Source: Octopus sinensis (taxonomy: Eukaryota). Taken from it: DNA of 64,000 bases. This document shows, one piece after another, positions 5,927-64,000 of this stretch (position 1 is the first letter of the stretch; each line of letters opens with the position of its first letter). Made by a program: the position numbers and the translations under genes. The stretch is from NCBI RefSeq assembly GCF_006345805.1, contig NW_021834901.1, positions 4,902-68,901 on the forward strand, given 5' to 3'. Below the pieces are notes generated by a model. The model worked only from the letters and a program-made list of their open reading frames with translations. It made no database searches and had not been told where the DNA came from.

Positions 5927-5977
<51 letters not shown>

Positions 5978-6020
5978 CGTGTGTGTGCGTGTGTGTGTGC
6001 GTGTGTGTGTGTGTGTGTGT

Positions 6021-7931
6021 GTAGTGTTGGCGAATCTCAGGAAGCATGGAAGTTTTGAAGGATGCAGTGCTCCGACAAGTAACAACTGATGCCGGCAGTT
6101 TGTTCCATGCTTGTATGTGTATGGAGGGGAGAAAATCAAGTGTAGTGTTGGCGAATCTCAGAAAGCATGGAAGTTTTGAAGGATGCAGTGCTCCGACAAC
6201 TAACAGCTGATGCCGGCAGTTTGTTCCATGCTTGTATGTGTATGGAGGGGAGAAAATCAAGTGTAGTGTTGGCGAATCTCAGGAAGCATGGAAGTTTTGA
6301 AGGATGCAGTGCTCCGACAACTAACAACTGATGCCGGCAGTTTGTTCCATGCATCAGCGTGTGTATGGAGGGGAGAAGATCAGGTGTAGTGTTGACGAAT
6401 CTCAGGAAGCATGGAAGTTTTGAAGGATGCAGTGCTCCGACAACTAACAACTGATGCCGGCAGTTTGTTCCGTGCTTGCGTGTGTATGGAGGGGAGAAAA
6501 TCAGGTGTAGTGTTGGCGAATCTCAGAAAGCATGAAAGTTTTGAAGGATGCAGTGCTCCGACAACTAACAACTGATGCCGGCAGTTTGTTCCGTGCTTGC
6601 GTGTGTATGAGGGGAGAAAATCAGGTGTAGTGTTGCCGAATCTCAGGAAGCATGGAAGTTTTTTTGAAGGATGCAGTGCCGACAAGTAACAACTGATGCC
6701 GGCAGTTTGTTCCATGCCTGCGTGTGTATGGAGGGGAGAAAATCAGGTGTAGTGTTGCCGAATCTCAGGAAGCATGGACGTTTTGAAGGATGCAGTGCTC
6801 CGAAAAGTAACAACTGATGCCGGCAGTTTGTTCCATGCTTGCGTGTGTATGGAGGGGAGGATATCAGGTGTAGTGTTGGCGAATCTCAGAAAGCATGGAA
6901 GTTTTGAAGGATGCAGTGCTCCGACAACTAACAACTGATGCCGGCAGTTTGTTCCATGCTTGCGTGTGTATGGAGGGGAGAAGATCAGGTGTAGTGTTGC
7001 CGAATCTCAGGAAGCATGGACGTTTTGAAGGATGCAGTGCTCCGACAACTAACAACTGATGCCGGCAGTTTGTTCCATGCTTGCGTGTGTATGGAGGGGA
7101 GAAAATCAGGTGTAGTGTTGGCGAATCTCAGGAAGCATGGAAGTTTTGAAGGATGCAGTGCTCCGACAACTAACAACTGATGCCGGCAGTTTGTTCCATG
7201 CATCAGCGTGTGTATGGAGGGGAGAAGATCAGGTGTAGTGTTGACGAATCTCAGGAAGCATGGAAGTTTTGAAGGATGCAGTGCTCCGACAACTAACAAC
7301 TGATGCCGGCAGTTTGTTCCGTGCTTGCGTGTGTATGGAGGGGAGAAAATCAGGTGTAGTGTTGGCGAATCTCAGAAAGCATGAAAGTTTTGAAGGATGC
7401 AGTGCTCCGACAACTAACAACTGATGCCGGCAGTTTGTTCCGTGCTTGCGTGTGTATGGAGGGGAGAAAATCAGGTGTAGTGTTGGCGAATCTCAGAAAG
7501 CATGGAAGTTTTGAAGGATGCAGTGCTCCGACAACTAACAGCTGATGCCGGCAGTTTGTTCCATGCTTGTATGTGTATGGAGGGGAGAAAATCAAGTGTA
7601 GTGTTGGCGAATCTCAGGAAGCATGGAAGTTTTGAAGGATGCAGTGCTCAGACAATTAACAACTGATGCCGGCAGTTTGTTCCATGCTTGCGTGTGTATG
7701 GAGGGGAGAAAATCAGGTGTAGTGTTGGCGAATCTCAGGAAGCATGGACGTTTTGAAGGATGCAGTGCTCCGACAACTAACAACTGATGCCGGCAGTTTG
7801 TTCCATGCTTGCGTGTGTATGGAGGGGAGGATATCAGGTGTAGTGTTGGCGAATCTCAGAAAGCATGGAAGTTTTGAAGGATGCAGTGCCCCAACAACTA
7901 ATAACTGATGCCGGCAGTTTGTTCCATGCTT
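6021..7931. repeat. 121-bp satellite array 1, ~16 copies, derived from a LINE 3' end
   Basis: GTAGTGTTGG recurs at 6021, 6142 and onward. Minus strand reads WNKLPASVVSCRSTASFKTSMLPEIRQHYT*, the WN.LP..VV...S...FK C-terminal motif of CR1/L2-group ORF2. Confidence 0.95.
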
Positions 7932-8050
7932 CAGCAAGTCTCAGCGTGAAAAATTATATCGGAAATGAATAAGAGAAAATTAACTTGGTGGATTATTACA
8001 CATACATAGTACAACAGGTCACATATCGACAAAAGGAAACTTGAAATTTC
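7925..8050 (-). pseudogene. LINE ORF2 remnant continuous with array 1
   Basis: Minus strand across the array edge reads FFTLRLAEAWNKLP, typical of CR1/L2 ORF2 ends; the frame is broken immediately upstream. The right boundary is approximate. Confidence 0.7.
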
Positions 8051-8071
8051 GAAGGAAATTATGATGTGCGT

Positions 8072-8120
<49 letters not shown>

Positions 8121-8974
8121 CTCAATAGTTTTTCTTTCCACATTAAATTCCAATATAATCGCAATTTACACACACTGTAACGTATTTGCAGAAAATTACA
8201 TTAGAAAATAACCCATTTTTGTTAAAGTTCTGAGCAAACACAGACAATTCGTGTGAATTTTACGAAACTCATCTTTCCGCCCACAGACAAATTTGTTTCG
8301 CTACAAATTCCGATATAATCAGAATGATCACCATCTGAAGCGTATTAACAGAAAATTTAATTAAATATGGCCGTTTGGCGGGGAGTTATGAGGAAACAAA
8401 TTCGGTGCGTCGCACACATCTGTGAGAATGGCTGCCTTCCGAAGACGGGTCTTCTGCTGGAAATCGCTGTTCCAGTCGGAAAGCTTCTCGGATGTCCTCT
8501 CCCGCATCTGTGCGTGTTGGTGGGACATTACCATCAAATCCAAGCACCATTTGAGTCGTCTCTTTTCCTAACTAACATCTCTCTCTCTCACTCTCTCTCT
8601 TTCTCTAATTCTTTTTTCTTTCTTTCTCTCTGGGGGTTATGTTGCAGCCCTACCCAACCACCAGAATCATCCTCACCTGACCTAAGACCGACAATGACAG
8701 AGAAAGTAGCTGTCCATCTGCAGCTGACATGTACCCCAAGCCTCGACTCCTTGAAGCATCAACGGCTTAAAATGTGTAAGAAGCCGGTTCCCATTGTTAA
8801 CAGCGTGTAGGTCAACGGCAGACATATCTGGTCGGTGGTGGAAGATTGAGACAGATGCACAGGTATCTCGACGAAATTCAGCTGCGGGGAAGTGGCATCT
8901 GTCTTTACGATCAACCATGTGTTTCATTTTTCTTGAATCTTTTATTTAAATAAGAAATTTCAGTGTTTTTTCCC

Positions 8975-22282: not shown

Positions 22283-22531
22283 CTTTTAGTGGGGGGCAAC
22301 CAGATCGAACCTTCCCAAGGTTACTGCCCGAGATGGTCGTGACTTGTGTGGGACTTGACTGAGGAAAGAGAGCGTTATTTTTTTACCATTTATATAAGTA
22401 TGTATGTGGTGTGTGTGTGTGTGTGTGTATGTGTGTGTGTGTATGTGTGTGTGTGAGTATGTGTGTGTGTGTGTTTCAATCTATGTATTGAAGTTTCTGT
22501 TTGTTTATCTGTCTAATTATTTTTCGAATTG

Positions 22532-22565
<34 letters not shown>

Positions 22566-24886: not shown

Positions 24887-24938
<52 letters not shown>

Positions 24939-30194: not shown

Positions 30195-30250
<56 letters not shown>
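22030..30250 (+). repeat. Segmental duplication, copy 3
   Basis: Matches copy 1 from 22124 and copy 2 from ~22515; lacks ~15100-17370 of copy 2. Confidence 0.88.
26820..28570 (-). pseudogene. Decayed R4-type RT fragment retaining the catalytic-core remnant
   Basis: ORF 28259-28513 reads NWKYPGPDTVQGYWLK. Manual translation gives INHLLKMDD*KLF and LFSKDIGMEFGI at ~27480-27580. Confidence 0.8.
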
Positions 30251-30560: not shown

Positions 30561-30608
<48 letters not shown>

Positions 30609-32302: not shown

Positions 32303-32425
32303 CCAGTCATTCGATATTTCGAGATATTTGGCCAGTCCAATTGTGGTTGTTTTGTAAGCTAGTTCAAATTGGATCAGGCCTCGACCTCCTTGGGCTCTGG
32401 GAAGGTAAAGGCGATCTACGTCTGC

Positions 32426-34054: not shown

Positions 34055-34076
34055 AAATTCATTCTCTTTTTCAATT

Positions 34077-35031
34077 TTACTTCTTCAGGTTTGATTTCTT
34101 CCCAGGTTTTGTTTTCTTTGTTTTTTCGGGGGGCATACAGCTGGTTTCAATTGCCCTAGCAGAAGCGTAAATAATTTCATTTAACTCAGTAAAATCAGGT
34201 TTTAATTCTCGTATTATTTCATTTGTTACATAGTTGCCAATTTGGATTTGTTTTTTATTTTGGTTTGTATTTGAGAGTTTATGAAGCGGTTCTCTATCAT
34301 TCATACTTGTATGTCTTACAACTTCAAGCGTATTCAGGATTTTCTGCCTCATTTCTGCTATAGACTCTCTGTGTTCTTCAGCAATGCGAGATCTTCAGTT
34401 ACTGTTGTTCTTTCGTTTTCCTGGCTATCTTTAACAGGTACAATAGAATTTCTTGTATCTTCAGGCCTTTGCGTACTTTGGTCAGATGGCAGTCTTTCAA
34501 TTAAGCCTCGTGGCGGCTATACTGTTCATCTGATTCTTCATTTCCTTTGTGTCTTATATTTATGTCATTTTCCGTTGTGTGCTTGATCGCGCTTATTTCA
34601 CTGTCTGTGAGTCTGTTATTTCTAAAGATATCCCTCCTCACATTTGCTAATTTGTTCTCGTCCAAATAGGGCCTACTGTCTTGATTCCGTGTTCTCCATA
34701 TACTGTAAGAGTTTGCGGTGTGTCTCTCTTGAGATGGCCTACCTAATGCATAGTAATAAGCGTATATTACTTCTTTATACTCTTCTCGGGTCCATTTGTT
34801 CCGCTTACATTTTTCTTTCTGTGGTGGTTGTGGTGGTGAACTTGGAGGGCTCGAGTTGGGGGATTTCCAGTTCAAGTGACCATCCATGTCCGTATTCGGA
34901 GAAGAGTTTGTGCCAGTTGATGACTTTTCGATCCCAGGCTGGCTCTTCCCTGGGGGACGCGCTTCCAGATTAACCATAGGACAAGCGATTTGGTATACTG
35001 ATTTAGTTTTCCTTTTAGTTTCCAAAAACAT
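34077..35031 (-). pseudogene. N-terminal part of R4 ORF split by frameshifts/stops
   Basis: ORF pieces 34501-35031 and 34077-34352 are collinear upstream of the RT. Confidence 0.7.
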
Positions 35032-41404: not shown

Positions 41405-41770
41405 CTATTGGATGTGTGGTAAGTAGCTATCTAACCAATCACATGCTTTTGGGTTCAGCATGGCAGAGCAGGGAATGTTTCTACTATATCCTCGGCCCGA
41501 ATAAAGCTTTTTGAGCGGATTTGGTAGATGGAACTGAAAGAAGCCTTCGATATTTATGTAGTTATATGATTGTGTGGTCTGTGCTTGTGCCCCCACTATC
41601 GCTTGACAACCGATGTTGGTGTGTTTCTGTCTCCAAAATATAGCGGTCCGGCAAAAGATAGAAGATAGAATAAGTAATAGGCTTAAAAAAATTAGTCCTG
41701 GGGTCGATTTGTTCGACTGTAGGCGGACTCCAGTATGGTCGCAGTTACATGACAGAAACGAATAAAAGAA
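41405..41770 (+). mobile_element. SINE family A, diverged
   Basis: GATGTGTGGTAAGTAGC...GGGTTCAG head through ...GAAATAAAAGAAA tail. Confidence 0.7.
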
Positions 41771-46134: not shown

Positions 46135-46880
46135 ATTCTCTTACTTGTTTCAGTCGTTTGACTGCGACCATGCTGGAGCACCGCCTTTAGTCGAGCAAAT
46201 CGACCCCGGGGCTTATTCTTTGTAAGCCTAGTACTTATTCTATCAGTCTCTTTTGCCGAACCGCTAAGTGACGGGGACGTAAACACACCAGCATAGGTTG
46301 TCAAGCAATGCTAGAGGGACAAACACAGGCATATAAACATATACACATATGCATTACATATATACGACAGGCTTCTTTCAGTTTCTGTCTACCAAATCCA
46401 CTCACAAGGCATTGGTTGGCCTGAGGCTTAAGCAGAACACTTGCCCAAGGTGCCACGCAGTGGGACTGAACCCGGAACCATGTGGTTGGTAAGCAAGCTA
46501 CTTACCACACAGCCACCCCTAGTCTATATACATATATACGACAGGCTTCTTTCAGTTTCCGTCTACCAAATCCACTCACAAGGCATTGGTTGGCCTGAGG
46601 CTATAGCAGAAGACACTTGCCCAAGATGCCACGCAGTGGGACTGAACCCAGAACCATGTGGTTTGTTAGCAAGCTACTTACCACACAGCCACCCCTAAGT
46701 CTATATACATATATACGACAGGCTTCTTTCAGTTTCCGTCTACCAAATCCACTCACAAGGCATTGGTTGGCCTGAGGCTATAGCAGAAGACACTTGCCCA
46801 AGATGCCACGCAGTGGGACTGAACCCAGAACCATGTGGTTGGTTAGCAAGCTACTTACCACACAGCCACTCTTACGTCTA
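46135..46880 (-). mobile_element. SINE family A with tandemly triplicated ~175-bp head
   Basis: CGACAGGCTTCTTTCAG at 46365, 46539 and 46716. Confidence 0.9.
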
Positions 46881-47654
46881 TGTATATATATATGCACACA
46901 CATACATACACAGCTGCTCTACTGGTTGTCATCACCCTTAAGATGAAACTTTAAGTTAACAGTTCAAGGGCAATAACTCTTGTAGAATAAGAAGTATTAC
47001 CTCCCTTAATGTAGTTAATTAAATTCTCTCGTTTGGGTCAAATTTTTCTTTCCGTCCTTCATTGACAATAAAACGAAGTGGTAAAGGTCGCTTCTTGCGT
47101 GTGTATGTTCGAGTGTAACTCAAACCGTTGATTCACTTCCCCTTCTCTGACGCAGATAACCGTCTCTTTCGTGGGCCACAATATAAACATCCCGCCAATT
47201 TTGGCGAGTGTGTCCGTGTTTCAGTGGAATTGCTCAAACGGTGATTCGAAATCGATCCGCTTACCGTCGCCGTCCGATCATGCGAAAAAAAAATCAATCA
47301 GTTAGGCGGCCATCCGTTCAATCGAGCAAGAGAAAGACGAGAAAGAAAGAGAGTGAGAGAGAAATACAGAGATAGAATGGGAGTGGGAGACAAATAGAGA
47401 GTGGGAGAATGAGAGAAGGGGAGAGAGGGAGGCAGATAGGGGTAGAGAGAGAAAGAGGAGAAAGAAAGAGAGAAAGAGTGGGAGTGAGAGGGAGAGAGAG
47501 AGAAACAGGCAGGAAGAGAGAGACGGGTGACACAACGGTGCCAGAGACACACAGACAGACAGATATATACAGTGAGAGAGAGAAAATAGAGTGACAGAGA
47601 CAGGTAGGAGAGAGAGAGAGTCTTTTTTCATCGTATGAGAATAGCAAGTCAGAG

Positions 47655-49379: not shown

Positions 49380-51410
49380 ATTAAGGGAAAGAAAGAGAGT
49401 GAGAGAGAGAGAGAGTAAAAAGAAGGAAAGAATGAAAGAGAGTGAGAGAGAGAGAGAAAGGAAGAAAAAAGAAAAAAAGAAGGAATGAAAGAAAAGAGAA
49501 AGGAAGGAATAAAGTAACATGATTCTGTAATAATGCATGAAATGAGAACGGAAGAAAGAAAGAAAGAAAGGAAGGAAGGAAGGAAGGAAATAATGTAGGA
49601 AAGAAGGAAGGAAATAATGTAGGAAAGAAGGAAGGAAAGAAAGGCAGTAAGAAGAAAGAAAGAAGGAAAGAAAGGCAGAAAGAAAGAAAGAAAGAAAGAA
49701 GGTAAAAAGGAAAGAAAGAAAGACAGAAAGTAAAAAGGAAAGAAAGAAAGAAAGAAAGTAAAAAGGAAAGAAAGAAAAAAAGAACGAAAGAACGAAAGAA
49801 AGAAAGGGAGTAAGTAAGAAAGAAGGGAGAAAGAAAGAAAGAAGGACAGAAGGAAAAAGAGGGGAAAATAAAAAGAAGGGAAGGAATAAAGAAAAAAAAA
49901 GAAAGGAAGAAAAAGGAAAGAAGGAAAAAGAAGGAAATGAAAAACTGAAACAAAAATAAAGAATATAACGAAAAGAAAGAAGAAGAAGAAAGAATGAGAG
50001 AAATGAAGAAAGAAAGACAGGAAAGAAAGAAAGAAGGAAGAAAGAAAGTAATGAAAGAAAAATAAAGAAATGTAATAAAGAAATCAGGAAAGAAAGAAAG
50101 AAGAAAAGAAAGTAAAAGGAAAGAAAGAAAAAAGAACGAAAGAACGAAAGAAAGAAAGGGAGTAAGTAGAAAGAAAGGGAGAAGAAAAGAAAGAAGGACG
50201 AAGGAAAAAGAGGAAATATGAAAGAATGAAGGGAAATAAGAGAAAAAAGAAGAAGAAAGGAAGAAGGAAAAAGAAGGAAATGAAAAACTGAAACAAAAAT
50301 AAGAAATAACGAAATGAAAGAAGGAAAGAAAGAAGATGAGAAGAATGAAAAGAAAGACAGAAGAAAGAAAGAATGGAAGAAAGAAAGTAATGAAGAAAGA
50401 AAAATAAAGAATTAAGAAGAAATCAGAAGAAGAAGAAGAAAAGAAAGACTGAAAGGATGAAGAAAGCAAGAAAGAAAGGAAAAGGAAAGAAAGAAAGAAA
50501 GAAAAAGGACATAAGTAAACGGAAACAAAAAGAAAGAAAGAGAGAGAGAAAAAAGAAGGAAAGAAAGAATGTGAGAAATGAAGGACGAAAGAAAGACAGA
50601 AAGGAAAGAAAGAAAGAATGAGAGAGAGATAGAGAGGAAGGCGACGTAATTCTGAAAAAATGATAAGAAGAAAGAGGGAGAAGGAGGGAGAGAGGGGGAG
50701 GAAGGAGGAGGGATTAGAGAAATAAATGTTAAGAAGAGAGGAGGAGTGTGAGATGAGAGAGAAAGAGTAAAAAGGCGGAGCATTAATATATAATAAGGTA
50801 ATAGAGAGAGGGAGAGGGAGAAAGAGAGAGACAGACAAACAGAGACACGGAGACAGAGAGAGACATAAGAAGCGAGAGGGCGAAAGAGAGAGACTGAAAG
50901 AGAGAAATCGAGAGAGCAAAGAGAGAGAAAGACAGACATAGAGAAAGAGAGGGAGAGGGAAAGGGAGGAGAAAGGGAGGGAAAGAATGAGGTAAGAGAAT
51001 GAGAGAATATTATATAAGGAGGTGGAGGGAGAGAGAGAAGGATACATAGGTTTAGAAAGAGAGGGAGTGTGTGAGGTGGGGCGGAGCGCAAAAGAGGTAG
51101 AGGGAGAGTATGAGATATGAGGTGGTAAAGAGGGAGGGAGAGAGACAAAAAGTGAGGGAGGGGAAGGAAACAGAGATGATGTATGAGATATATGCTTTGT
51201 GAGGGAGGGAGAGTAAGAGTTGAGAGAAAACGAGGGATGAGGGAGGCGGGGTTAAACAATAACATAAATAAGTGAAAGAGGGGGAGGGAGAGGAGTAGAG
51301 AAGGAGAGGGAATGATGTGTGTGATAAGAGAGGGAGTCTATCATGTATTAGAGAAAGGAAGAGGGGAAGGATGAGGTATTAATACAGAATGAGGAAGGAG
51401 AGAGAAGAGT
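49380..51410. repeat. Purine-rich (GAAA/GA) low-complexity tract with an internal ~340-bp duplication
   Basis: Almost all A/G on the plus strand; GAACGAAAGAACGAAAG at ~49781 and ~50124. Confidence 0.9.
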
Positions 51411-51567
51411 TTCGAAGTGTCCTTCATTTTCATATGAAACACAAAACCAAACTTTAACATACTTGGCTGTTATTTCTAGCATCACATTTGATCCCCAACT
51501 GGACTATATTTCTCCAAAAGCTTCTGAAAGTGTCCTTCATGATAACAATGTAAAGTATAGCGTAATG

Positions 51568-51925
51568 GGCTGTTATTTCTAGCAAGATAACAGACCACCA
51601 ATACGTTTTATAGACGCTTCTTCACTTGGTTTCTCTTTCGAGGAAGAAGTCTGACCAGATCCGGGAAAAAGTTTTATAAATGCTTCTTAAATTGTCTTTC
51701 AATTTCGTATGAAAAACAAAGGAACTTTGAGTGTAGTGGGCTGTTATTTCTAGCAAGATACCAGACCACCAATACGTTTTATAGACGCTTCTTCACTTGG
51801 TTTCTCTTTCGAGGAAGAAGTCTGACCAGATTCGGGAAAAAGTTTTATAAATGCTTCTGAAATTGTCTTTCAATTTCGTATGAAAAACAAAGCAACTTTG
51901 AGTGTAGTGGGCTGTTATTTCTAGC
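51568..51925. repeat. ~170-bp tandem duplication
   Basis: GGGCTGTTATTTCTAGCA restarts at ~51567, ~51738 and ~51908. Confidence 0.85.
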
Positions 51926-52189
51926 AGGTGTAGAAATAAACCAGGTGTAGGAGGATTCTTTGAATAAATGCTTCTTAAATTGTCCGTCAATGTCTCGGCT
52001 AATTAATTTGCTCAATTAAGAACTACACAGTAATTATGTAATTAATGGTTAGTTAAATAATTAGCTTCTGGTAAAATAATTAGCGAGAGAGAAATTTGAA
52101 GGTAAATCTGAAAATATAATTTATTTGTAAGAAAGTAAGGTTTCTTAGGGATAAAAGGAGAGGAAGAGGGAGAGAGTAAGATATAAGGA

Positions 52190-53300
52190 GGTGGGGGAGA
52201 TAGAGAGAGAAAGAAAGGAAGAAAGAGTGAGAGAGAGAAAGCCTAGGGAAGGGGAGGGATATATTAATGTATGAGGAAGGAGAGAAAGAATGAGAGTGGG
52301 AGAGAGAGAGAGAGAGAAAGAAAGGAAGAAAGAGTGAGAGAGAGAGAAAATAGGGAAAGGAAGGGATATATTAATGTATGAGGAAGCAGAGAAAGAATGA
52401 GAGGGGGAGAGAGAGAGAGAGAGAGAATGCGTGAGAGAGAGAGAGAGAGAGAAAGAAAGGAAGAAAGAGTGAGAGAGAGAGAAAATAGGGAAAGGGAGGG
52501 ATATGTTAATGTATGAGGAAGCAGAGAAAGAATGAGAGTGGGAGAGAGAGAGAGAGACAGTATGCGTGAGAGAGAGAGAGAGAGGAAGGAAGAAAGAGTG
52601 AGAGAGAGAAAGCCTAGGGAAGGGGAGGGATATATTAATGTATGAGGAAGCAGAGAAAGAATGAGAGTGGGAGAGAGAGAGAGAGAGACAGAATGCGTGA
52701 GAGAGAGAAGAGAAAGGAAGAAAGAGTGAGAGAGAGAAAGCCTAGGGAAGGGGAGGGATATATTAATGTATGAGGAAGTAGAGAAAAAATGAGAGTCGGA
52801 GAGAGAGAGAGAGACAGAATGCGTGAGAGAGAGAGAGAGAAAGAAAGGAAGAAAGAGTGAGAGGGTGAAAGCCTAGGGAAGGGGGGGATATATTAATGTA
52901 TGAGGAAGCAGAGAGGGGGAGTGAGAGTGTGAGAGAGAGAGAGAGACAGAATGCGTGAGTGAGAGAGAGAGAAGAAGGAAGAAAGAGTGTGAGAGAGAAA
53001 CCCTAGGGAAGGGGAGGGATATATTAATGTATGAGGAAGCAGAGAGTGGGAGTGAGAGTGGGAGAGAGAGAGAGACAGAATGCGTGAGAGAGAGAGAGAG
53101 AGAGAGATAGAAAGGAAGAAAGAGTGAGAGAGAAGAGAGAGAATGCGTGGAGAGAAGAGAAGAAAGAAAGGAAGAAAGAGTGAGAGAGAGAAAGCCTAGC
53201 GAAGGGGAGGGCTATATTAATGTATGAGGAAGCAGAGAAAGAATGAGAGTGGGAGAGAGAGAGAGACAGAATGCGGGAGAGAGAGAGAGAGAGAGAGAGA
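52190..53300. repeat. ~130-bp purine-rich composite minisatellite, ~8 copies
   Basis: AT(A/G)TTAATGTATGAGGAAG recurs at ~52261, 52370, 52504, 52633, 52762, 52892, 53022 and 53216. Confidence 0.85.
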
Positions 53301-54779
53301 TACAGTTAGTGAGGGAGAGGAAGAGGTGAAGGCTTTTGCAAGGGAGGTGGGCGGTGATTAAAATGAATATATAATGAGGTTCTGAGAGAAAGGAGACAAA
53401 GAGGGAGAAGTGGGAGGATATGTTTTGTAGGGGAGGGAGAAAGAGTATGAAAATGCATTAAGGGTTTAGTGAGGTACAGACAGAGGGAATTAAGAGTAAA
53501 AGCAAGGGAGGGGGAAGCATTTGGTAATATATGAGGAGGTGGGAGAGGGAGGCGAAGAGAAAGAGACAAAGAGGGAGAGCGCGCTTATTGGACGATATAT
53601 ATTTAGTAATAGGGGAAGGGTATGAGTTAATAAAGAAAGCAAAATGGGCGGAGTCAGTCTACATTATGCAAAGTGGTGGGAGGAGTCAACGTTGAAGGGG
53701 TAAGAACAATAACTCTTATTGAATCCCTTTTCGCTTTAAATTCTATTTTTTTCTTTCGCAGAATTTGAAGATTTCCAAAAATGATTTAATGTAAATAATA
53801 GATCGAAGGGTTTAATATTGCAATTCTTAGCCCTTAATTTCCTCCTCGTAATCTTCACACTGCACCCTGCACCTATTGTGGATGCAGCTGCTAGAAATAG
53901 CAGCCAAACATCGCATACTAAATGAAACCTCTGATTTCTTTAATTGCTTCAAAATTTATTAAGTTGAGGAAAAAGTTCGTGCGTTTGGTCTTTATTTTGA
54001 AGAATATTTGTTGCTTTTGAATAAATTCTTGCATAAAACAATCATTATTTTAACACGACGCACAGACATTTCCCTCAATCTAATAGTTTCTATTTTATAA
54101 TTGGCATTTGGTCAGATAACTGCAAAGATTAGCCATTGACTGTCCACTACAAAGAGAAGGGGGCAAGAATATGCAATGAAAGTGCAGTTAAGTGCAGCCG
54201 TGCACTGGTTGTTGTCCTATTTTAAGCTGCAAAAATGTGAAAGTAAACTTCGAGAAGGAAAGGGATCAGACCGGAAGTGATGAGAATAGAACAGGAAACA
54301 AGTGAATGCCATCTAACGGAGAACAATTCAGCTCATAGTGACGACGCCTCTACCACCGAAACATCTCGACACACTGTTTTTACTCATCGCAGGCCGGTCT
54401 CATGGATGTGTGACGGAGCTGTGTTGCGGGGAAACAGCTACGAGAACGGAAATCGACGGAAATTGACGCATCTCGACGGTTATGAAGGAGTTCAGTGAGT
54501 AGATATTAAATGCCTTTCGGTATTGCTTCAGATGTTTGACACCCGAATTTTCTGCCTCAGAGCTTCCAGAAAATGGAGATTTTAAATTATATTTTCGAAA
54601 ACTGAGCTTCTGATGCTGTAAATTGCGATTATATCGGAATATTTGATGAAAACATTTTTCCTTCTTCGATGTTAGGAGTTTTGGAAAATTCACACAAGGC
54701 GTCTGGCTTTCTTCACAACTTTCAGAAAAATAGTAAATTTTTAATGGAATTTTCTATAAATGCCTTTCAGAGTGTATCG

Positions 54780-54921
54780 ATTACAATTATAAAATAATAA
54801 TAAAAATAATGAAATTATTGTATACAGTGCTCAGGTGCACCACCACTTGTCAGAAAGTGGGTATAAAGTGTATGCAGTAATGTACAAATGTATGGAAAGC
54901 GAACAGTGTATGAGTCAGATA
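54780..54921 (-). mobile_element. 3' UTR and (ATT)-rich tail of the LINE that seeded the 121-bp satellite
   Basis: Minus strand continues from the unit (...ACGCAAGCATG) into unique sequence with a GTGC-ACCTGA-GCAC stem-loop and an ATTATT-rich tail. Confidence 0.65.
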
Positions 54922-57900
54922 CATGCTTGCGTATGTATGGAGGGGAGGACATCAGGTGTAGTGTTGGCGAATCTCAGAAAGCATTGAAGTTTTGAAGGAT
55001 GCAGTGCTCCGACAACTAACAACTGATGCCGGCAGTTTGTTCCATGCTTGTGTGTGTATGGAGGGGAGGAAATCAGGTGTAGTGTTGGTGAATCTCAGGA
55101 AGCATGGAAGTTTTGCAGGATGCAGTGCTCCGACAACTAACAACTGATGCCGGCAGTTTGTTCCATGCTTGCGTGTGTATGGAGGGGAGAAAATCAGGTG
55201 TAGTGTTGGCGAATCTCAGAAAGCATGGAAGTTTTGAAGGATGCAGTGCTCAGAAAATTAACAACTGATGGCGGCAGTTTGTTCCATGCTTGCGTGTGTA
55301 TGGAGGGGAGGAAATCAGGTGTAGTGTTGGCGAATCTCAGAAAGCATGGAAGTTTTGAAGGATGCAGTGCTCAGACAATTAACAACTGATGCCGGCAGTT
55401 TGTTCCATGCTTGCGTGTGTATGGAGGGGGGGAAATCAGGTGTAGTGTTGGCGAATCTCAGAAAGCATGGAAGTTTTGAAGGATGCAGTGCTCCGACAAC
55501 TAACAACTGATGCCGGCAGTTCGTTCCATGCTTGTGTGTGTATGGAGGGGAGGAAATCAGGTGTAGTGTTAGCGAATCTCAGGAAGGATGGAAGTTTTGA
55601 AGGATGCAGTGCTCCGACAACTAACGACTGATGCCGGCAGTTGTTCCATGCTTGTGTGTGTATGGAGGGGAGGAAATCAGGTGTAGTGTTGGCGAATCTC
55701 AGGAAGCATGGAAGTTTTGAAGGATGCAGTGCTCAAACAATTAACAACTGATGCCGGCAGTTTGTTCCATGCTTGCGTGTGTATGGAGGGGAGGAAATCA
55801 GGTGTAGTGTTGGTGAATCTCAGGAAGAATGGAAGTTTTGAAGGATGCAGTGCTCAGAAAATTAACAACTGATGCCGGCAGTTTGTTCCATGCTTGAGTG
55901 TGTATGGAGGGGAGGAAATCAGGTGTAGTGTTGGTGAATCTCAGGAAGAATGGAAGTTTTGAAGGATGCAGTGCTCAGACAACTAACAACTGATGCCGGC
56001 AGTTTGTTCCATGCTTGAGTGTGTATGGAGGGGAGGAAATCAGGTGTAGTGTTGGTGAATCTCAGGAAGAATGGAAGTTTTGAAGGATGCAGTGCTCAGA
56101 CAACTAACAACTGATGCCGGCAGTTTGTTCCATGCTTGCGTGTGTATGGAGGGGAGGAAATCAGGTGTAGTGTTGGTGAATCTCAGGAAGAATGGAAGTT
56201 TTGAAGGATGCAGTGCTCAGACAATTAACAACTGATGCCGGCAGTTTGTTCCATGCTTGCATGTGTATGGAGGGGAGGAAATCAGGTGTAGTGTTGGTGA
56301 ATCTCAGGAAGGATGGAAGTTTTGAAGGATGCAGTGCTCAGACAATTAACAACTGATGCCGGCAGTTTGTTCCATGCTTGAGTGTGTATGGAGGGGAGGA
56401 AATCAGGTGTAGTGTTGGTGAATCTCAGGAAGGATGGAAGTTTTGAAGGAGGCAGTGCTCAGACAATTAACAACTGATGCCGGCAGATTGTTCCATGCTT
56501 GCGTGTGTATGGAGGGGAGGAAATCAGGTGTAGTGTTGGTGAATCTCAGGAAGAATGGAAGTTTTGAAGGATGCAGTGCTCAGACATTAACAACTGATGC
56601 CGCAGTTTGTTTCCATGCTTGAGTGTGTATGGAGGGGAGGAAATCAGGTGTAGTGTTGGTGAATCTCAGGAAGGATGGAATTTTGAAGGATGCAGTGCTG
56701 CAACCACTAAACTGATGCCGGCAGTTTGTTCCATGCTTGAGTGTGTATGGAGGGGAGGAAATCAGGTGTAGTGTTGGTGAATCTCAGGAAGAATGGAAGT
56801 TTTGAAGATGCAGTGCTCAGAAAATTAACAACTGATGCCGGCAGTTTGTTCCATGCTTGTGTGTATGGGGAGGGGAGGAAATCATGTAGTGTTGGTGAAT
56901 CTCAGGAAGGATGGAAGTTTTGAAGGATGCAGTGCTGCAACCTCTAACAACTGATGCCGGCAGTTTGTTCCATGCTTGAGTGTGTATGGAGGGGAGGAAA
57001 TCAGTGTAGTGTTGGTGAATCTCAGGAAGGATGGAAGTTTTGAAGGATGCAGTGCTGCACACTAACACTGATGCCGGCAGTTGTTCCCTGCTTGAGTGTG
57101 TATGGAGGGGAGGAAATCAGGTGTAGTGTTGGTGAATCTCAGGAAGGATGGAAGTTGTGAAGGATGCAGTGCTCAGACAATTAACAACTGATGCCGGCAG
57201 TTTGTTCCATGCTTGCGTGTGTATGGAGGGGAGGAAATCAGGTGTAGTGTTGGTGAATCTCAGGAAGAATGGAAGTTTTGAAGGATGCAGTGCTCAGACA
57301 ATTAACAACTGATGCCGGCAGTTTGTTCCATGCTTGCGTGTGTATGGAGGGGAGGAAATCAGGTGTAGTGTTGGTGAATCTCAGGAAGAATGGAAGTGTT
57401 GAAGGATGCAGTGCTCAGACAATTAACAACTGATGCCGGCAGTTTGTTCCATGTTTGCGTGTGTATGGAGGGGAGGAAATCAGGTGTAGTGTTGGTGAAT
57501 CTCAGGAAGAATGGAAGTTTTGAAGGATGCAGTGCTCAGAAAATTAACAACTGATGCCGGCAGTTTGTTCCATGCTTGAGTGTGTATGGAGGGGAGGAAA
57601 TCAGGTGTAGTGTTGGGGAATCTCAGGAAGAATGGAAGTTTTGAAGGATGCAGTGCTCAGACAATTAACAACTGATGCCGGCAGTTTGTTCCATGCTTGA
57701 GTGTGTATGGAGGGGAGGAAATCAGGTGTAGTGTTGGTGAATCTCAGGAAGGATGGAAGTTTTGAAGGATGCAGTGCTGCAACCACTAACAACTGATGCC
57801 GGCAGTTTGTTCCATGCTTGCGTGTGTATGGAGGGGAGGAAATCAGGTGTAGTGTTGGTGAATCTCAGGAAGGATGGAAGTTTTGAAGGATGCAGTGCTG

Positions 57901-60900
57901 CAACCACTAACAACTGATGCCGGCAGTTTGTTCCATGCTTGAGTGTGTATGGAGGGGAGGAAATCAGGTGTAGTTTTGGTGAATCTCAGGAAGGATGGAA
58001 GTTTTGAAGGATGCAGTGCTCAGACAATTAACAACTGATGCCGGCAGTTTGTTCCATGCTTGCGTGTGTATGGAGTGGAGGAAATCAGGTGTAGTGTTGG
58101 TGAATCTCAGGAAGAATGGAAGTTTTGAAGGATGCAGTGCTCAGACAATTAACAACTGATGCCGGCAGTTTGTTCCATGCTTGCGTGTGTATGGAGGGGA
58201 GGAAATCAGGTGTAGTGTTGGTGAATCTCAGGAAGAATGGAAGTGTTGAAGGATGCAGTGCTCAGACGATTAACAACTGATGCCGGCAGTTTGTTCCATG
58301 TTTGCGTGTGTATGGAGGGGAGGAAATCAGGTGTAGTGTTGGTGAATCTCAGGAAGAATGGAAGTTTTGAAGGATGCAGTGCTCAGACAATTAACAACTG
58401 ATGCCGGCAGTTTGTTCCATGCTTGCGTGTGTATGGAGGGGAGGAAATCAGGTGTAGTGTTGGTGAATCTCAGGAAGAATGGAAGTTTTGAAGGATGCAG
58501 TGCTCAGACAATTAACAACTGATGCCGGCAGTTTGTTCATGCTTTGTGTGTATGGAGGGGAGGAAATCAGGTGTAGTGTTGGTGAATCTCAGGAAGGATG
58601 GAAGTTTTGAAGGATGCAGTGCTTGCAAACCACTAACAACTGATGCCGGCAGTTTGTTCCATGCTTGAGTGTGTATGGAGGGGAGGAAATCAGGTGTAGT
58701 GTTGGTGAATCTCAGGAAGAATGGAAGTTTTGAAGGATGCAGTGCTGCAACCACTAACAACTGATGCCGGCAGTTTGTTCCAAGCTTGAGTGTGTATGGA
58801 GGGGAGGAAATCAGGTGTAGTGTTGGTGAATCTCAGGAAGATGGAAGTTTTGAAGGATGCAGTACTCAGACAATTAACAACTGATGCCGGCAGTTTGTTC
58901 CATGCTTGCGTGTGTATGGAGGGGAGGAAATCAGGTGTAGTTTTGGGAATCTCAGAAGGATGGAAGTTTTGAAGGATGCAGTGCTGCAGACCACTAACAA
59001 CTGATGCCGGCAGTTTGTTCCATGCTTGAGTGTGTGGAGGGGAGGAAATCAGGTGTAGTGTTGGTGAATCTCAGGAAGAATGGAAGTTTTGAAGGATGCA
59101 GTGCTCAGAAAATTAACAACTGATGCGGCAGTTTGTTCTGCTTGAGTGTGTATGGAGGGGAGGAAATCAGGTGTAGTGTTGGTGAATCTCAGAAGGATGG
59201 AAGTTTTGAAGGATGCAGTGCTGCAACTCTACAACTGATGCCGGCAGTTTGTTCCATCCATGCTTGAGTGTGTATGGAGGGGAGAAATCAGGTGTAGTGT
59301 TTGTTGAATCTCAGGAAGGATGGAAGTTTTGAAGGATGCAGGGCTGGCAACAACTAACAACTGATGCCGGCAGTTTGTTCCATGCTTGAGTGTGTATGGA
59401 GGGGAGGAAATCAGGTGTAGTTTTGGTGAATCTCAGGAAGGATGGAAGTTTTGAAATATGCAGTGCTCAGACAATTAACAACTGATGCCGGCAGTTTGTT
59501 CCATGCTTGCGTGTGTATGGAGGGGAGGAAATCAGGTGTAGTGTTGGTGAATCTCAGGAAGAATGGAAGTTTTGAAGGATGCAGTGCTCAGACAATTAAC
59601 AACTGATGCCGGCAGTTTGTTCCATGCTTGCGTGTGTATGGAGGGGAGGAAATCAGGTGTAGTGTTGGTGAATCTCAGGAAGAATGGAAGTGTTGAAGGA
59701 ATGCAGTGCTCAGACAATTAACAACTGATGCCGGCAGTTTGTTCCATGTTTGCGTGTGTAGGAGGGGAGGAAATCAGGTGTAGTGTTGGTGAATCTCAGG
59801 AAGAATGGAAGTTTTGAAGAAGGATGCAGTGCTCAGAAAATAACAAACTGACTGATGCCGGCAGTTTGTTCCAAGCTTGAGTGTGTATGGAGGGGAGGAA
59901 ATCAGGTGTAGTGTTGGGGAATCTCAGGAAGAATGGAAGTTTTGAAGAGATGCAGTGCTCAGACAATAACACAACTGATGCCGGCAGTTTGTTCCATGCT
60001 TGAGTGTGTATGGAGGGGAGGAAATCAGGTGTAGTGTTGGTGAATCTCAGGAAGGATGGAAGTTTTGAAGGATGCAGTGCTGCAACCACTAACAACTGAT
60101 GCCGGCAGTAGTTTGTTCCATGCTTGAGTGTGTATGGAGGGAGGAGGAATCAGGTTGTAGTGTTGGTGAATCTCAGGAAGGATGGAAGTTTTGAAGGATG
60201 CAGTGCTGCAACCACTAACAACTGATGCCGGCAGTTGTTCCATGCTTGAGTGTGATGGAGGGGAGGAAATCAGGGGTAGTTTTGGTGAATCTCAGGAAGG
60301 ATGGAAGTTTTGAGGATGCAGTGCTCAGACAATTAACAACTGATGCCGGCAGTTTGTTCCATGCTTGCGTGTGTATGGAGTGGAGGAAATCAGGTGTAGT
60401 GTTGGTGAATCTCAGGAAGAATGGAAGTTTTGAAGGATGCAGTGCTCAGACAATTAACAACTGATGCCGGCAGTTGTTCCATGCTTGCGTGTGTGTATGG
60501 AGGGGAGGAAATCAGGTGTAGTTTTGGTGAATCTCAGGAAGAATGGAAGTTGAAGGATGCAGTGCTCAGACGATTAAAACTGATGCCGGCAGTTTGTTCC
60601 ATGCTTGCGTGTGTATGGAGGGGAGGAAATCAGGTGTAGTGTTGGTGAATCTCAGGAAGAATGGAAGTTTTGAAGGATGCAGTGCTCAGACAATTAACAA
60701 CTGATGCCGGCAGTTTGTTCCATGCTTGCGTGTGTATGGAGGGGAGGAAATCAGGTGTAGTGTTGGTGAATCTCAGGAAGAATGGAAGTTTTGAAGGATG
60801 CAGTGCTCAGACAATTAACAACTGATGCCGGCAGTTTGTTCCATGCTTGTGTGTGTATGGAGGGGAGGAAATCAGGTGTAGTGTTGGTGAATCTCAGGAA

Positions 60901-63900
60901 GAATGGAAGTTTTGAAGGATGCAGTGCTGCAACCACTAACAACTGATGCCGGCAGTTTGTTCCATGCTTGCGTGTGTATGGAGGGGAGGAAATCAGGTGT
61001 AGTGTTGGTGAATCTCAGGAAGAATGGAAGTTTTGAAGGATGCAGTGCTCAGACAATTAACAACTGATGCCGGCAGTTTGTTCCATGCTTGAGTGTGTAT
61101 GGAGGGGAGGAAATCAGGTGTAGCGTTGGTGAATCTCAGGAAGGATGGAAGTTTTGAAGGATGCAGTGCTGCAACCACTAACAACTGATGCCGGCAGTTT
61201 GTTCCATGCTTGTGTGTGTATGGAGGGGAGGAAATCAGGTGTAGTGTTGGTGAATCTCAGGAAGGATGGAAGTTTTGAAGGATGCAGTGCTGCAACCACT
61301 AACAACTGATGCCGGCAGTTTGTTCCATGCTTGAGTGTGTATGGAGGGGAGGAAATCAGGTGTAGTGTTGGTGAATCTCAGGAAGAATGGAAGTTTTGAA
61401 GGATGCAGTGCTGCAACCACTAACAACTGATGCCGGCAGTTTGTTCCAAGCTTGAGTGTGTATGGAGGGGAGGAAATCAGGTGTAGTGTTGGTGAATCTC
61501 AGGAAGGATGGAAGTTTTGAAGGATGCAGTACTCAGACAATTAACAACTGATGCCGGCAGTTTGTTCCATGCTTGCGTGTGTATGGAGGGGAGGAAATCA
61601 GGTGTAGTGTTGGTGAATCTCAGGAAGGATGGAAGTTTTGAAGGATGCAGTGCTCAGACAATTAACAACTGATGCCGGCTGTTTGTTCCATGCTTGCGTG
61701 TGTATGGAGGGGAGGAAATCAGGTGTAGTGTTTGTGAATCTCAGGAAGAATGGAAGTTTTGAAGGATGCAGTGCTCAGACAATTAACAACTGATGCCGGC
61801 AGTTTGTTCCATGCTTGAGTGTGTATGGAGGGGAGGAAATCAGGTGTAGCGTTGTCAATCTCAGGAAGGATGGAAGTTTTGAAGGATGCAGTGCTGCAAC
61901 CACTAACAACTGATGCCGGCAGTTTGTTCCATGCTTGTGTGTGTATGGAGGGGAGGAAATCAGGTGTAGTGTTGGTGAATCTCAGGAAGGATGGAAGTTT
62001 TGAAGGATGCAGTGCTGCAACCACTAACAACTGATGCCGGCAGTTTGTTCCATGCTTGAGTGTGTATGGAGGGGAGGAAATCAGGTGTAGTGTTGGTGAA
62101 TCTCAGGAAGAATGGAAGTTTTGAAGGATGCAGTGCTGCAACCACTAACAACTGATGCTGGCAGTTTGTTCCAAGCTTGCGTGTGTATGGAGGGGAGGAA
62201 ATCAGGTGTAGTGTTGGTGAGTCTCAGGAAGAATGGAAGTTTTGAAGGATGCAGTGCTGCAACCACTAACAACTGATGCCGGCAGTTTGTTCCATGCTTG
62301 CGTGTGTATGGAGGGGAGGAAATCAGGTGTAGTGTTGGTGAATCTCAGGAAGGATGGAAGTTTTGAAGGATGCAGTGCTCAGACAATTAACAACTGATGC
62401 CGGCAGTTTGTTCCATGCTTGCGTGTGTATGGAGGGGAGGAGATCAGGTGTAGTGTTGTTGAATCTCAGGAAGGATGGAAGTTTTGAAGGATGCAGTGCT
62501 GCAACCACTAACAACTGATGCCGGCAGTTTGTTCCATGCCTGAGTGTGTATGGAGGGGAGGAAATCAGGTGTAGTGTTGGTGAATCTCAGGAAGAATGGA
62601 AGTTTTGAAGGATGCAGTGCTCAGACAATTAACAACTGATGCCGGCAGTTTGTTCCATGCTTGTGTGTGTTTGGAGGGGAGGAAATCAGGTGTAGTGTTG
62701 GTGAATCTCAGCAAGGATGGAAGTTTTGAAGGATGCAGTGCTGCAACCACTAACAACTGATGCCGGCAGTTTGTTCCATGCTTGTGTGTGTATGGAGGGG
62801 AGGAAATCAGGTGTAGTGTTGGTGAATCTCAGGAAGGATGGAAGTTTTGAAGGATGCAGTGCTCAGACAATTAACAACTGATGCCGGCAGTTTGTTCCAT
62901 GCTTGTGTGTGTATGGAGGGGAGGAAATCAGGTGTAGTGTTGGTGAATCTCAGGAAGGATGGAAGTTTTGAAGGATGCAGTGCTCAGACAATTAGCAACT
63001 GAGGACGGCAGTTTGTTCCATGCTTGCGTGTGTATGGAGGGGAGGAAATCAGGTGAAGTGTTGGTGAATCTCAGGAAGGATGCAAGTTTTGAAGGATGCA
63101 GTGCTCAGACAATTAACAACTGATGCCGGCAGTTTGTTCCATGCTTGCGTGTGTATGGAGGGGAGGAAATCAGGTGTAGTGTTGGTGAATCTCAGGAAGG
63201 ATGGAAGTTTTGAAGGATGCAGTGCTCAGACAATTAACAACTGATGCCGGCAGTTTGTTCCATGCTTGTGTGTGTATGGAGGGGAGGAAATCAGGTGTAG
63301 TGTTGGTGAATCTCAGGAAGAATGGAAGTTTTGAAGGATGCAGTGCTCAGACAATTAACAACTGATGCCGGCAGTTTGTTCCATGCTTGCGTGTGTATGG
63401 AGGGGAGGAAATCAGGTGTAGTGTTGGTGAATCTCAGGAAGAATGGAAGTTTTGAAGGATGCAGTGCTCAGACAATTAACAACTGATGCCGGCAGTTTGT
63501 TCCATGCTTGCGTGTGTATGGAGGGGAGGAAATCAGGTGTAGTGTTGGTGAATCTCAGGAAGGATGGAAGTTTTGAAGGATGCAGTGCTGCAACCACTAA
63601 CAACTGATGCCGGCAGTTTGTTCCATGCTTGAGTGTGTATGGAGGGGAGGAAATCAGGTGTAGTGTTGGTGAATCTCAGGAAGGATGGAAGTTTTGAAGG
63701 ATGCAGTGCTCAGATAATTAACAACTGATGCCGGCAGTTTGTTCCATGCTTGAGTGTGTAAGGAGGGGAGGAAATCAGGTGTAGTGTTGGTGAATCTCAG
63801 GAAGAATGGAAGTTTTGAAGGATGCATTGCTCAGACAATTAACAACTGATGCCGGCAGTTTGTTCCATGCTTGTGTGTGTATGGAGGGGAGGAAATCAGG

Positions 63901-64000
63901 TGTAGTGTTGGTGAATCTCAGGAAGAATGGAAGTTTTGAAGGATGCAGTGCTCAGACAATTAACAACTGATGCCGGCAGTTTGTTCCATGCTTGCGTGTG
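54922..64000. repeat. 121-bp satellite array 2, ~75 copies, runs off the window
   Basis: Same unit and orientation as 6021-7931; begins at CATGCTT (54922). Confidence 0.97.

What the first reader, a model, noticed from the sequence alone, without database searches (positions are those of the whole stretch)
54780..55100. Tail-side junction: the 9-kb array is anchored in an intact LINE 3' UTR
Seen: the array begins at CATGCTT (54922), and leftward lies a unique UTR with a small stem-loop and an (ATT)-rich tail. Array 1 instead ends at a (TG)n run but retains the ORF-side junction. Together they reconstruct ORF end - [121 bp]n - UTR - tail. Inference: arrays may be expanded inside, and dispersed by, the LINE itself, since the 3' recognition tail is preserved.
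Basis: partly seen in the sequence, partly recalled or inferred. Interest (0 to 1): 0.7.

Follow-up and report, generated by a model that had tools for sequence, protein, structure and literature searches.

The report
LINE tail-derived 121-bp satellite array
The 9-kb array is a 121-bp piece of the 3' end of a CR1/jockey-like LINE (the last 31 codons, the stop codon and the first 25 bases of the 3' UTR), amplified in place inside a dead, truncated LINE copy; this is an ordinary, already documented way for satellite DNA to arise.

Summary
Array 2 starts at 54922. To its left lie about 115 bp of unique sequence and an (ATT)-rich tail. On the minus strand these are 90% identical to the 3' UTR and tail of a LINE copy in Octopus vulgaris (L004). 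That copy carries the same 121-bp segment only once: ...HFFTLRVAEAWNKLPASVVSCRSTASFKTSMLPEIRQHYT*, then UTR, then ATT tail.

In that element the amplified segment is bounded by a 7-8-nt direct repeat, (G)AAGCATG.

The claim that the LINE itself disperses the arrays is only partly supported. An independent O. vulgaris locus (L006) has 6.9 units contiguous with at least 590 nt of LINE ORF, but it lacks the UTR and tail.

The two arrays in the window do not look like two separate insertions. The ORF-side flank of array 1 and the tail-side flank of array 2 are complementary halves of one target repeat ("X"). They share a 5-6-bp target-site duplication (ATTATA). The likeliest history is one roughly 300-bp 5'-truncated insertion that expanded in place and was later split or partly duplicated at the DNA level.

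LINE-3'-end-derived satellites are already known: the chicken HinfI repeat from CR1 and the cetacean common satellite from L1. Interest is low to moderate.

The parts
54922..64000 (-). Array 2: at least 75 units of 121 bp, running off the window. On the minus strand each unit reads AWNKLPASVVSCRSTASFKTSMLPEIRQHYT + TGA + 25 nt of 3' UTR.
   Evidence: Tandem Repeats Finder; unit segmentation, 87-100% identity to consensus; translation. The seven units nearest the tail (54922-55767) keep the ancestral, array-1-type variants; the interior carries derived ones.
54808..54921 (-). Single-copy part of the LINE 3' UTR (minus strand: TATCTGACTCATAC...GCACTGTATACAATAATTTCATT).
   Evidence: Unique in the window. 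90.4% identical over 135 nt to L004:10821-10955 and 87.7% to L004:16974-17103. The 3'-terminal block is conserved in 7 copies.
54826..54841 (-). Conserved small hairpin GGUGC-ACCUGA-GCACU just upstream of the tail; a candidate recognition element for the reverse transcriptase.
   Evidence: 5 pairs kept in 6 copies, with one compensatory UA>GC change and one GU>AU change. The evidence is thin (6 sequences).
54843..54860 (-). It is specific to this copy.
   Evidence: In L004a the arms read GCACTT/AAGTTG, which gives only 4 pairs. It is not part of the consensus fold.
54792..54810 (-). Degenerate (ATT)n tail of the LINE (minus strand: ATTATTTTTATTATTATTTT).
   Evidence: Relatives end in clean (ATT)3-9 runs followed by unrelated flanks.
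54786..54791 (+). Target-site duplication, tail-side copy (ATTATA).
   Evidence: the joined flanks carry a 5-nt surplus compared with the intact X repeat. Sequence.
54434..54791 (+). Xa: the left part of the target repeat X (about 160-bp sub-units carrying the motif GATTATATCGGAAT). It ends at the insertion site.
   Evidence: 69% identity over 269 bp to the reverse complement of 8154-8422; motif at 54627-54640.
7953..7958 (+). Target-site duplication, ORF-side copy (ATTATA).
7959..8073 (+). Xb: the continuation of X after the insertion site (TCGGAAAT...), plus spacer up to the (GT)n run.
   Evidence: ATTATATCGGAA at 7953-7964 matches the X motif 12/12. Similarity beyond the motif is not significant on its own.
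7930..7953 (-). The only LINE ORF sequence outside the array (FFTLRLAE). The 5' truncation point of the insertion lies here, and an in-frame TAA sits at 7954-7956.
   Evidence: Read by eye, TTTTTCACGCTGAGACTTGCTGAAGC differs at one base from L004/L006 TTTTTCACGCTGAGAGTTGCTGAAGC.
6019..7931 (-). Array 1: 15.8 units, all of the ancestral variant type, with a weak 7-unit higher-order period.
   Evidence: (identity 95.6% at lag 7 against about 93% at other lags).
5934..6027 (.). (TG)n run that cuts array 1 at unit position 35. This is a rearrangement breakpoint; no UTR or tail is present here.
   Evidence: The left flank 5400-5933 has no similarity to X or to the LINE.
8119..8511 (-). Intact inverted copy of X. 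Together with Xa+Xb it forms a foldback-like pair around a roughly 160-bp spacer.

Best explanation
A CR1/jockey-like non-LTR retrotransposon (LINE) inserted on the minus strand as a severely 5'-truncated copy of about 300 bp: the last 39 codons of ORF2, the stop codon, a roughly 145-nt 3' UTR and an (ATT)n tail. It landed in a local repeat, X, and made a 5-6-bp target-site duplication (ATTATA).

In the canonical element a 7-8-nt direct repeat, (G)AAGCATG, occurs twice. One copy lies in the codons for E-A-W; the other lies 121 nt further on, 23 nt past the stop codon. The 121 bp between them duplicated by slippage or unequal exchange at this microhomology (inferred). Unequal crossing-over then expanded the segment to at least 91 units. 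Derived variants were homogenised in the interior, while the edge units stayed ancestral.

The array is therefore anchored on one side in the intact UTR, hairpin and tail (54792-54921), and on the other side in 24 nt of ORF (7930-7953). These two anchors now lie 47 kb apart and in permuted order. A later DNA-level rearrangement, not retrotransposition, most likely copied or moved the ORF-proximal block (array part + ORF end + Xb + inverted X) to a (TG)n breakpoint upstream (inferred).

What is shown: the LINE identity of unit, UTR and tail; the single-unit canonical structure; the direct repeats; and the matching flanks. What is inferred: the order of events and the kind of rearrangement.
For: 1. 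The C-terminal peptide hits 5 proteins (E 9e-11 to 4e-7) that cover FFTLR..HYT. P0002 ends at HYT. Source names are 'RNA-directed DNA polymerase from mobile element jockey-like [Octopus vulgaris]' and 'Tick transposon'.
2. L004:10440-10935 (O. vulgaris) has ORF end, one unit, the same UTR and the tail. Identity to the window is 95% for the unit and 90% for UTR plus tail. A second 5'-truncated single-unit copy lies at L004:16974-17171.
3. The direct repeat AAGCATG is read directly.
4. Seven copies share the terminal block and the (ATT)n tail, with unrelated flanks.
5. The left flank of array 2 and the right flank of array 1 are the only X sequences in the window. All 4 hits to the X motif lie beside the arrays, against 0.85 expected by chance. 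The joined flanks align through the junction to the intact X with a 5-nt surplus.
6. The arrays differ at 5 of 121 consensus positions, and the edge units of array 2 are of the array-1 type.
Against: The far (ORF-side) end of array 2 lies beyond the window, so the single-insertion model is not closed.

Beyond the 12-nt motif, Xb is not significantly similar to the intact X (21% of random windows and 40% of shuffles score as well). The flank match therefore rests on the motif, its exact position and the target-site duplication.

No full-length element with a reverse-transcriptase or endonuclease domain was retrieved. Pfam finds nothing in the C-terminal fragments, so the clade is not fixed.

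L006 shows that arrays exist at another locus with a different truncation point. That leaves room for array-bearing source elements.
Confidence: 0.7

Rival explanations
1. One reading: an array-bearing LINE master copy is transcribed and retrotransposed. Arrays 1 and 2 would then be two independent insertions, both in X repeats because the element prefers the X motif as a target.
For: L006 is an independent locus whose array is contiguous with at least 590 nt of ORF, against 24 nt in array 1. Array 2 keeps the hairpin and tail needed for target-primed reverse transcription. The rare 123-bp junction type CACACGCTGA(A/T)GCATGG occurs both in L006 and in two units of array 1.
Against: None of the other 3' ends retrieved lies in an X motif; all flanks are unrelated, so there is no sign of site specificity. 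Array 1 and L006 both lack the UTR and tail. Two insertions at the same nucleotide of X, each now showing only the complementary junction, would be a large coincidence. Both junction types can arise repeatedly from the same misalignment GC[TG]AAGCATG.
Confidence: 0.2
2. The arrays belong to a DNA element with terminal inverted repeats, like the mollusc elements that carry satellites between conserved arms. X would be its arms, and the LINE-like reading would be incidental.
For: The X copies flank the arrays in inverted orientation relative to each other.
Against: The junctions are LINE junctions: an (ATT)n tail on one side, a 5' truncation on the other, and a target-site duplication inside X. 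The unit and UTR are 90-95% identical to LINE copies that have no X nearby. X was not found in 61 kb of related loci.
Confidence: 0.04
3. Assembly artefact: the permuted order of the two junctions, or the array length, comes from a false join within long near-identical repeats.
For: Arrays of 121-bp units at 94% identity are hard to assemble, and the region is full of local duplications.
Against: A simple false join within the array would not place the right-hand flank 47 kb upstream of the left-hand flank. The two arrays carry distinct, spatially ordered variant patterns. Array 1 ends in a specific (TG)n junction.
Confidence: 0.06

Closest known systems
Chicken HinfI repeat, derived from the CR1 LINE (Li & Leung 2006, as tabulated in the review PMC9659126)
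   Same: A satellite-like tandem repeat whose monomer contains the 3' UTR and part of ORF2 of a CR1-type LINE.
   Different: Here the monomer is only 121 bp. It is bounded by a 7-8-nt direct repeat and still sits inside an identifiable LINE insertion with tail and target-site duplication. The host is a cephalopod.
Cetacean common satellite, derived from the L1 3' end (review PMC9659126)
   Same: A LINE 3'-terminal segment turned into a tandem array.
   Different: A different LINE clade. Nothing here shows genome-wide abundance or a centromeric role.
Retrotransposons with variable tandem repeats in their 3' UTR that seed satellites (Ogre LTR elements, PMC7004042; the SVA variable-number repeat, from my own knowledge)
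   Same: Tandem repeats inside the 3' part of a retroelement, with short arrays in some copies and long arrays elsewhere (for PMC7004042, title only).
   Different: Most copies of this LINE retrieved here carry one unit. No array-bearing copy with its own tail and target-site duplication was shown at a second locus.
SINE-derived satellites in scaled reptiles (PMC10702118)
   Same: Tandem arrays formed from part of a non-LTR retroelement (abstract).
   Different: The source here is a LINE coding end plus UTR, not a SINE.

Membership tests
CR1/jockey-like non-LTR retrotransposon (3' end) | Homology to the ORF2 region downstream of the reverse transcriptase, ending at the same stop codon | tested here: met
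   P0001-P0012 (VRPHLEF..VWNP..LE.VQRRATR..TRGH..FFTLR..WNKLP..FK..HYT*). NCBI names P0012 'RNA-directed DNA polymerase from mobile element jockey-like'.
CR1/jockey-like non-LTR retrotransposon (3' end) | Reverse-transcriptase and apurinic-type endonuclease domains in the same ORF | not testable with these tools
   Every copy retrieved is 5'-truncated downstream of the reverse transcriptase. Pfam finds no family in the fragments. The RVT_1 LINE at 31322-35031 in the window is unrelated.
CR1/jockey-like non-LTR retrotransposon (3' end) | 3' end formed by a short tandem-repeat tail rather than poly(A), preceded by a conserved terminal block | tested here: met
   ...GTGGTGCACCTGAGCACTGTATACAATAATTTCATT(ATT)n in 7 copies from at least 4 assemblies, followed by unrelated flanks.
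CR1/jockey-like non-LTR retrotransposon (3' end) | Conserved 3' stem-loop supported by covariation | tested here: inconclusive
   a 5-bp hairpin with one compensatory change in 6 sequences; the fold is no better than shuffles; no Rfam family.
CR1/jockey-like non-LTR retrotransposon (3' end) | Variable 5' truncation and a target-site duplication | tested here: met
   Truncation points differ between the window (7953), L006 (at or before 10170), L004 (about 10440 and inside the unit at 17171) and L003 (about 543). The ATTATA duplication is seen when the two window flanks are joined.
Transposable-element-derived satellite DNA | Head-to-tail array whose monomer is homologous to a defined segment of the element | tested here: met
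   the unit is 95% identical to L004:10700-10820.
Transposable-element-derived satellite DNA | Arrays at several loci, some free of the parent element | tested here: inconclusive
   Only the window (two arrays) and L006 are known. Array ORFs are absent from the protein collections, and a DNA scan of metagenomes found nothing. No eukaryotic genome could be searched by DNA.
Retroelement with an internal variable-number repeat mobilised by retrotransposition (SVA- or Ogre-like) | Several insertions, each with an array, its own tail and its own target-site duplication | tested here: inconclusive
   Only array 2 has a tail. Array 1 and L006 lack one. Arrays 1 and 2 share one target site.
Satellite-carrying DNA elements with conserved arms (mollusc Helentron- or MITE-like) | The array is bounded by the element's own arms at both ends | tested here: not met
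   X is interrupted by a LINE tail and a target-site duplication. LINE copies elsewhere have no X.

The most novel reading that the evidence does not exclude
The arrays are made or seeded by the LINE machinery itself. The reverse transcriptase would switch template repeatedly between the two (G)AAGCATG repeats during target-primed reverse transcription. Short arrays would then be carried to new sites in LINE RNA, so this family would act as a dispersed seeder of satellites in octopus genomes. Hints: head-to-tail and head-to-head joined LINE 3' fragments in L004 and L001, and a LINE-A array fused directly to a different LINE's 3' end in L006.
Probability: 0.15. Interest if true: 0.55.

Novelty: new member of a known kind. 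Interest (0 to 1): 0.3.

Why it matters
This is a clean case in which the birth of a satellite can be read base by base:
- the parent LINE segment;
- the 7-8-nt direct repeats that frame the first duplication;
- the intact anchor (UTR, hairpin, tail, target-site duplication);
- the gradient from ancestral edge units to homogenised interior units.

For genome annotation, these 121-bp arrays in octopus assemblies should be labelled as LINE-derived. The short ORFs they contain (AWNKLP...HYT) are not genes.

It adds a cephalopod example to a known class. It does not change how satellite origin is understood.

Tried and rejected
- Looked for the parent LINE inside the window. The only reverse-transcriptase-bearing LINE (31322-35031, RVT_1) shows no similarity to the unit, at either DNA or protein level.
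The exhaustive representative search was needed.
- A search with an array-encoded ORF, meant to survey other arrays, returned only the two O. vulgaris LINE fragments. Array ORFs are not in the collection.
- An exact-pattern scan of JGI metagenome contigs gave 0 hits.
- Look-ups of three window ORFs, meant to locate the window in a genome or find a second copy of array 1's flank, were all 'not on record'. The source assembly and the far end of array 2 remain unknown.
- Rfam on 54400-55200 gave only chance-level hits.
- Pfam on the LINE C-terminal fragments gave nothing.
- A weak tblastn hit, VSCRWTATF at 8702-8728, looked like a second degenerate LINE C-terminus (E = 0.29). The translations upstream show nothing LINE-like, so it was dropped as chance.
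- The model in which X forms the arms of an inverted-repeat element was rejected. See the rival explanations.
- A significance test of Xb beyond the motif was not significant and is reported as such.
Full report
**What is in the window**

Tandem Repeats Finder reports two arrays of one 121-bp unit on the same strand. Array 1 lies at 6019-7931 (15.8 copies). Array 2 lies at 54922-64000 (75.1 copies, 94% matches) and runs off the window.

On the minus strand a unit reads AWNKLPASVVSCRSTASFKTSMLPEIRQHYT, then TGA, then 25 nt. That makes 96 coding bases and 25 non-coding bases.

At the right end of array 1 the minus strand reads TAA-FFTLRLAE-AWNKLP.... Only 24 nt of extra ORF (7930-7953) precede the array, and an in-frame stop comes directly before them. 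The left end of array 1 is cut at unit position 35 by a (TG)n run.

Left of array 2 lie about 115 bp that occur nowhere else in the window, followed by an AT-rich, ATT-like stretch.

**Is it a LINE 3' end?**

The only reverse-transcriptase-bearing LINE in the window (31322-35031, RVT_1) is unrelated to the unit. Evidence therefore had to come from outside the window.

An exhaustive phmmer search with the 39-aa peptide (window:7837-7953:-) found five proteins, with E-values from 9e-11 to 4e-7, that cover FFTLR...HYT. Their upstream sequence runs VRPHLEFASPVWNP..LE.VQRRATR..SLKLRRL..TRGH.YKVRK..FRKHFFTLR..WNKLP..FK. From my own knowledge, this is the region that follows the reverse transcriptase in CR1/jockey-type LINEs. 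P0002 ends exactly at HYT. Source names include 'RNA-directed DNA polymerase from mobile element jockey-like [Octopus vulgaris]'. Pfam has no model for this region. No full-length element was retrieved, so the exact clade is open.

**The canonical element**

Locus L004 (NCBI GCA_951406725.2, OX597841.1; its proteins are named Octopus vulgaris) contains, at 10440-10935, the following sequence:

...HFFTLRVAEAWNKLPASVVSCRSTASFKTSMLPEIRQHYT* TGA TTTTCTCCCCTCCATACACACAGAAGCATG TATCTGACTCATACAC...GTGGTGCACCTGAGCACTGTATACAATAATTTCATTATA, followed by unrelated flank.

- The window unit is 95% identical to L004:10700-10820.
- The window's UTR plus tail (minus strand of 54780-54921) is 90.4% identical over 135 nt to L004:10821-10955.
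- A second, 5'-truncated single-unit copy lies at L004:16974-17171.

Seven copies from at least four assemblies share the terminal block and end in (ATT)3-9, followed by unrelated flanks.

A 5-bp hairpin, GGUGC/GCACU (window 54826-54841), is kept in six copies with one compensatory change. The region as a whole folds no better than shuffles and matches no Rfam family.

**How the array started**

In the single-unit element the 121-bp segment is framed by a direct repeat. GCTGAAGCATG lies in the ORF (codons A-E-A-W). CGCAAGCATG or CAGAAGCATG lies in the UTR, ending 30 nt past the stop codon.

Unit junctions in the arrays are the expected hybrids. CACACGCAAGCATGG is the 121-bp type. A rarer 123-bp type, CACACGCTGA(A/T)GCATGG, occurs in two units of array 1 and in the first units of L006. 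Both types follow from misalignment of GC[TG]AAGCATG. This points to slippage or unequal exchange at a short pre-existing direct repeat, followed by unequal crossing-over. That mechanism is an inference.

The two arrays differ at 5 of 121 consensus positions. The seven units of array 2 nearest the tail keep the ancestral (canonical and array-1) bases, whereas the interior carries derived bases. This is the usual pattern of interior homogenisation in a tandem array.

**The flanks: one insertion, not two**

- The left flank of array 2 (54529-54791) is 69% identical to the reverse complement of 8154-8422, which lies to the right of array 1.
- This repeat, here called X, has about 160-bp sub-units carrying the motif GATTATATCGGAAT.
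- The motif has 4 hits in the window against 0.85 expected by chance, and all four lie beside the arrays.
- X on the array-2 side stops at ...GATTACAATTATA (54791), where the LINE tail begins.
- The flank on the ORF side of array 1 starts ATTATATCGGAAAT (7953). This is a 12/12 match to the rest of the motif.
- When the two flanks are joined, they align straight through the junction to the intact X copy, with a 5-nt surplus. That fits a 5-6-bp target-site duplication, ATTATA, at 54786-54791 and 7953-7958.

One caveat applies. Beyond the motif, the array-1 flank is not significantly similar to the intact X. The argument therefore rests on the motif, its exact position and the duplication.

None of the other LINE 3' ends retrieved sits in an X motif, so a site-specific target preference is unsupported.

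I therefore read the two junctions as the two ends of one insertion. It was a 5'-truncated fragment of about 300 bp, and it expanded in place. The ORF-side junction now lies 47 kb upstream of the tail-side junction, and array 1 ends at a (TG)n breakpoint with unrelated sequence beyond it. A DNA-level duplication or transposition of the ORF-proximal block is therefore the simplest history. The window contains other local segmental duplications: 1-2867 resembles 11161-13233 and 22032-24659. The inverted X at 8119-8511 would then be the partner arm of a foldback-like pair that existed before the insertion.

**Is the array dispersed by the LINE?**

Locus L006 (O. vulgaris, CATOCA020000001.1) gives an independent case. 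LINE ORF sequence runs from at or before 10170 to the stop at 10761, followed by 6.9 units (10665-11495). The truncation point differs from that of array 1, so this is a separate insertion.

The L006 array ends abruptly at 11499 against the 3' end of a different CR1-like LINE. That second element has its own ...WNKLP..FK.. C-terminus and an (AACT)n tail. No UTR or tail of the parent LINE is present.

So arrays occur in at least two LINE insertions. Whether they were inherited from an array-bearing source RNA, or arose twice at the same predisposing direct repeats, cannot be decided from these data. Only array 2 keeps the tail. Most copies retrieved carry one unit: L001-L005, about 10 copies.

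**Comparison with what is known**

Satellites derived from LINE 3' ends are documented. Examples are the chicken HinfI repeat (CR1 3' UTR plus partial ORF2) and the cetacean common satellite (L1 3' end) (review PMC9659126). Satellites derived from retroelement 3' UTR tandem repeats (PMC7004042) and from SINEs (PMC10702118) are also described.

This case is a new member of that kind in a cephalopod. It is unusually legible because the anchor, the target-site duplication and the founding direct repeats all survive.

**Verdict**

- Observation: confirmed.
- Anchoring in an intact LINE 3' UTR and tail: confirmed.
- Dispersal by the LINE: not shown, and for the two arrays in this window probably wrong.
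- Interest: low to moderate.

Noticed in passing
window 31322-35031 (minus), with tails at 30147-30249 and 30561-30608: An unrelated LINE with an RVT_1 domain (542-aa ORF) and a zf-RVT-like region (326-aa ORF). Long (TTA)n/(ATT)n runs lie downstream on its strand. It has no similarity to the 121-bp unit.
   Followed up: partly
window 1-2867, 11161-13631, 22032-25080 and onward: Local segmental duplication with a period of about 11 kb, at 87-92% identity. Copies 2 and 3 stay collinear for about 8-10 kb. Copy 1 diverges after 2867, just upstream of array 1.
   Followed up: partly
window 3190-5639: Tandem repeat with a unit of about 840 bp (3 copies, 95% identity), directly upstream of the (TG)n run and array 1.
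   Followed up: no
window 46355-46892; also 9459-9854, 20084-20590, 29110-29434, 41409-41770: A SINE-like element of about 177 bp, present as a 3-copy tandem array and as many dispersed copies at 70-95% identity.
   Followed up: no
window 7953-8511: The X motif, a spacer containing (GT)n, and an inverted X copy form a foldback-like inverted repeat with arms of about 300-360 bp at 69% identity. X itself is built from about 160-bp sub-units.
   Followed up: partly
L004:10140-10935: Two LINE 3' fragments joined head to tail. The first stops 13 nt into the unique UTR (...GCATGTATCTGAC). The second starts further upstream in the ORF (AACCAAGAGAATACC...). There is no tail between them, which suggests template switching or recombination rather than nested insertion.
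   Followed up: partly
L001:1-530: Two LINE 3' ends joined head to head, an inverted copy followed by a forward copy. This could be a twin-priming-like inversion or a palindromic assembly artefact in a 602-bp metagenome contig.
   Followed up: no
L006:11499-11900: A second, different CR1-like LINE 3' end (...FSVRVADPWNKLPDEMVKMLTTARFKVSLDQKW, with an (AACT)n tail) abuts the 121-bp array directly. This is either a chimeric retrocopy or an insertion accompanied by a deletion.
   Followed up: partly
P0001, P0003, P0004 (loci L003, L001, L005): The gene calls for these metagenome contigs read the LINE's TGA stop as W, and the tool reports 'translates_to_query: no'. The calls were apparently made with a TGA=Trp genetic code, so the 3' UTR was translated as protein.
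   Followed up: partly
window 49387-53300: About 4 kb of purine-rich low-complexity sequence, (GAAA)n/(AG)n, with higher-order periods of 107-343 bp. It gives long spurious ORFs on the minus strand.
   Followed up: no
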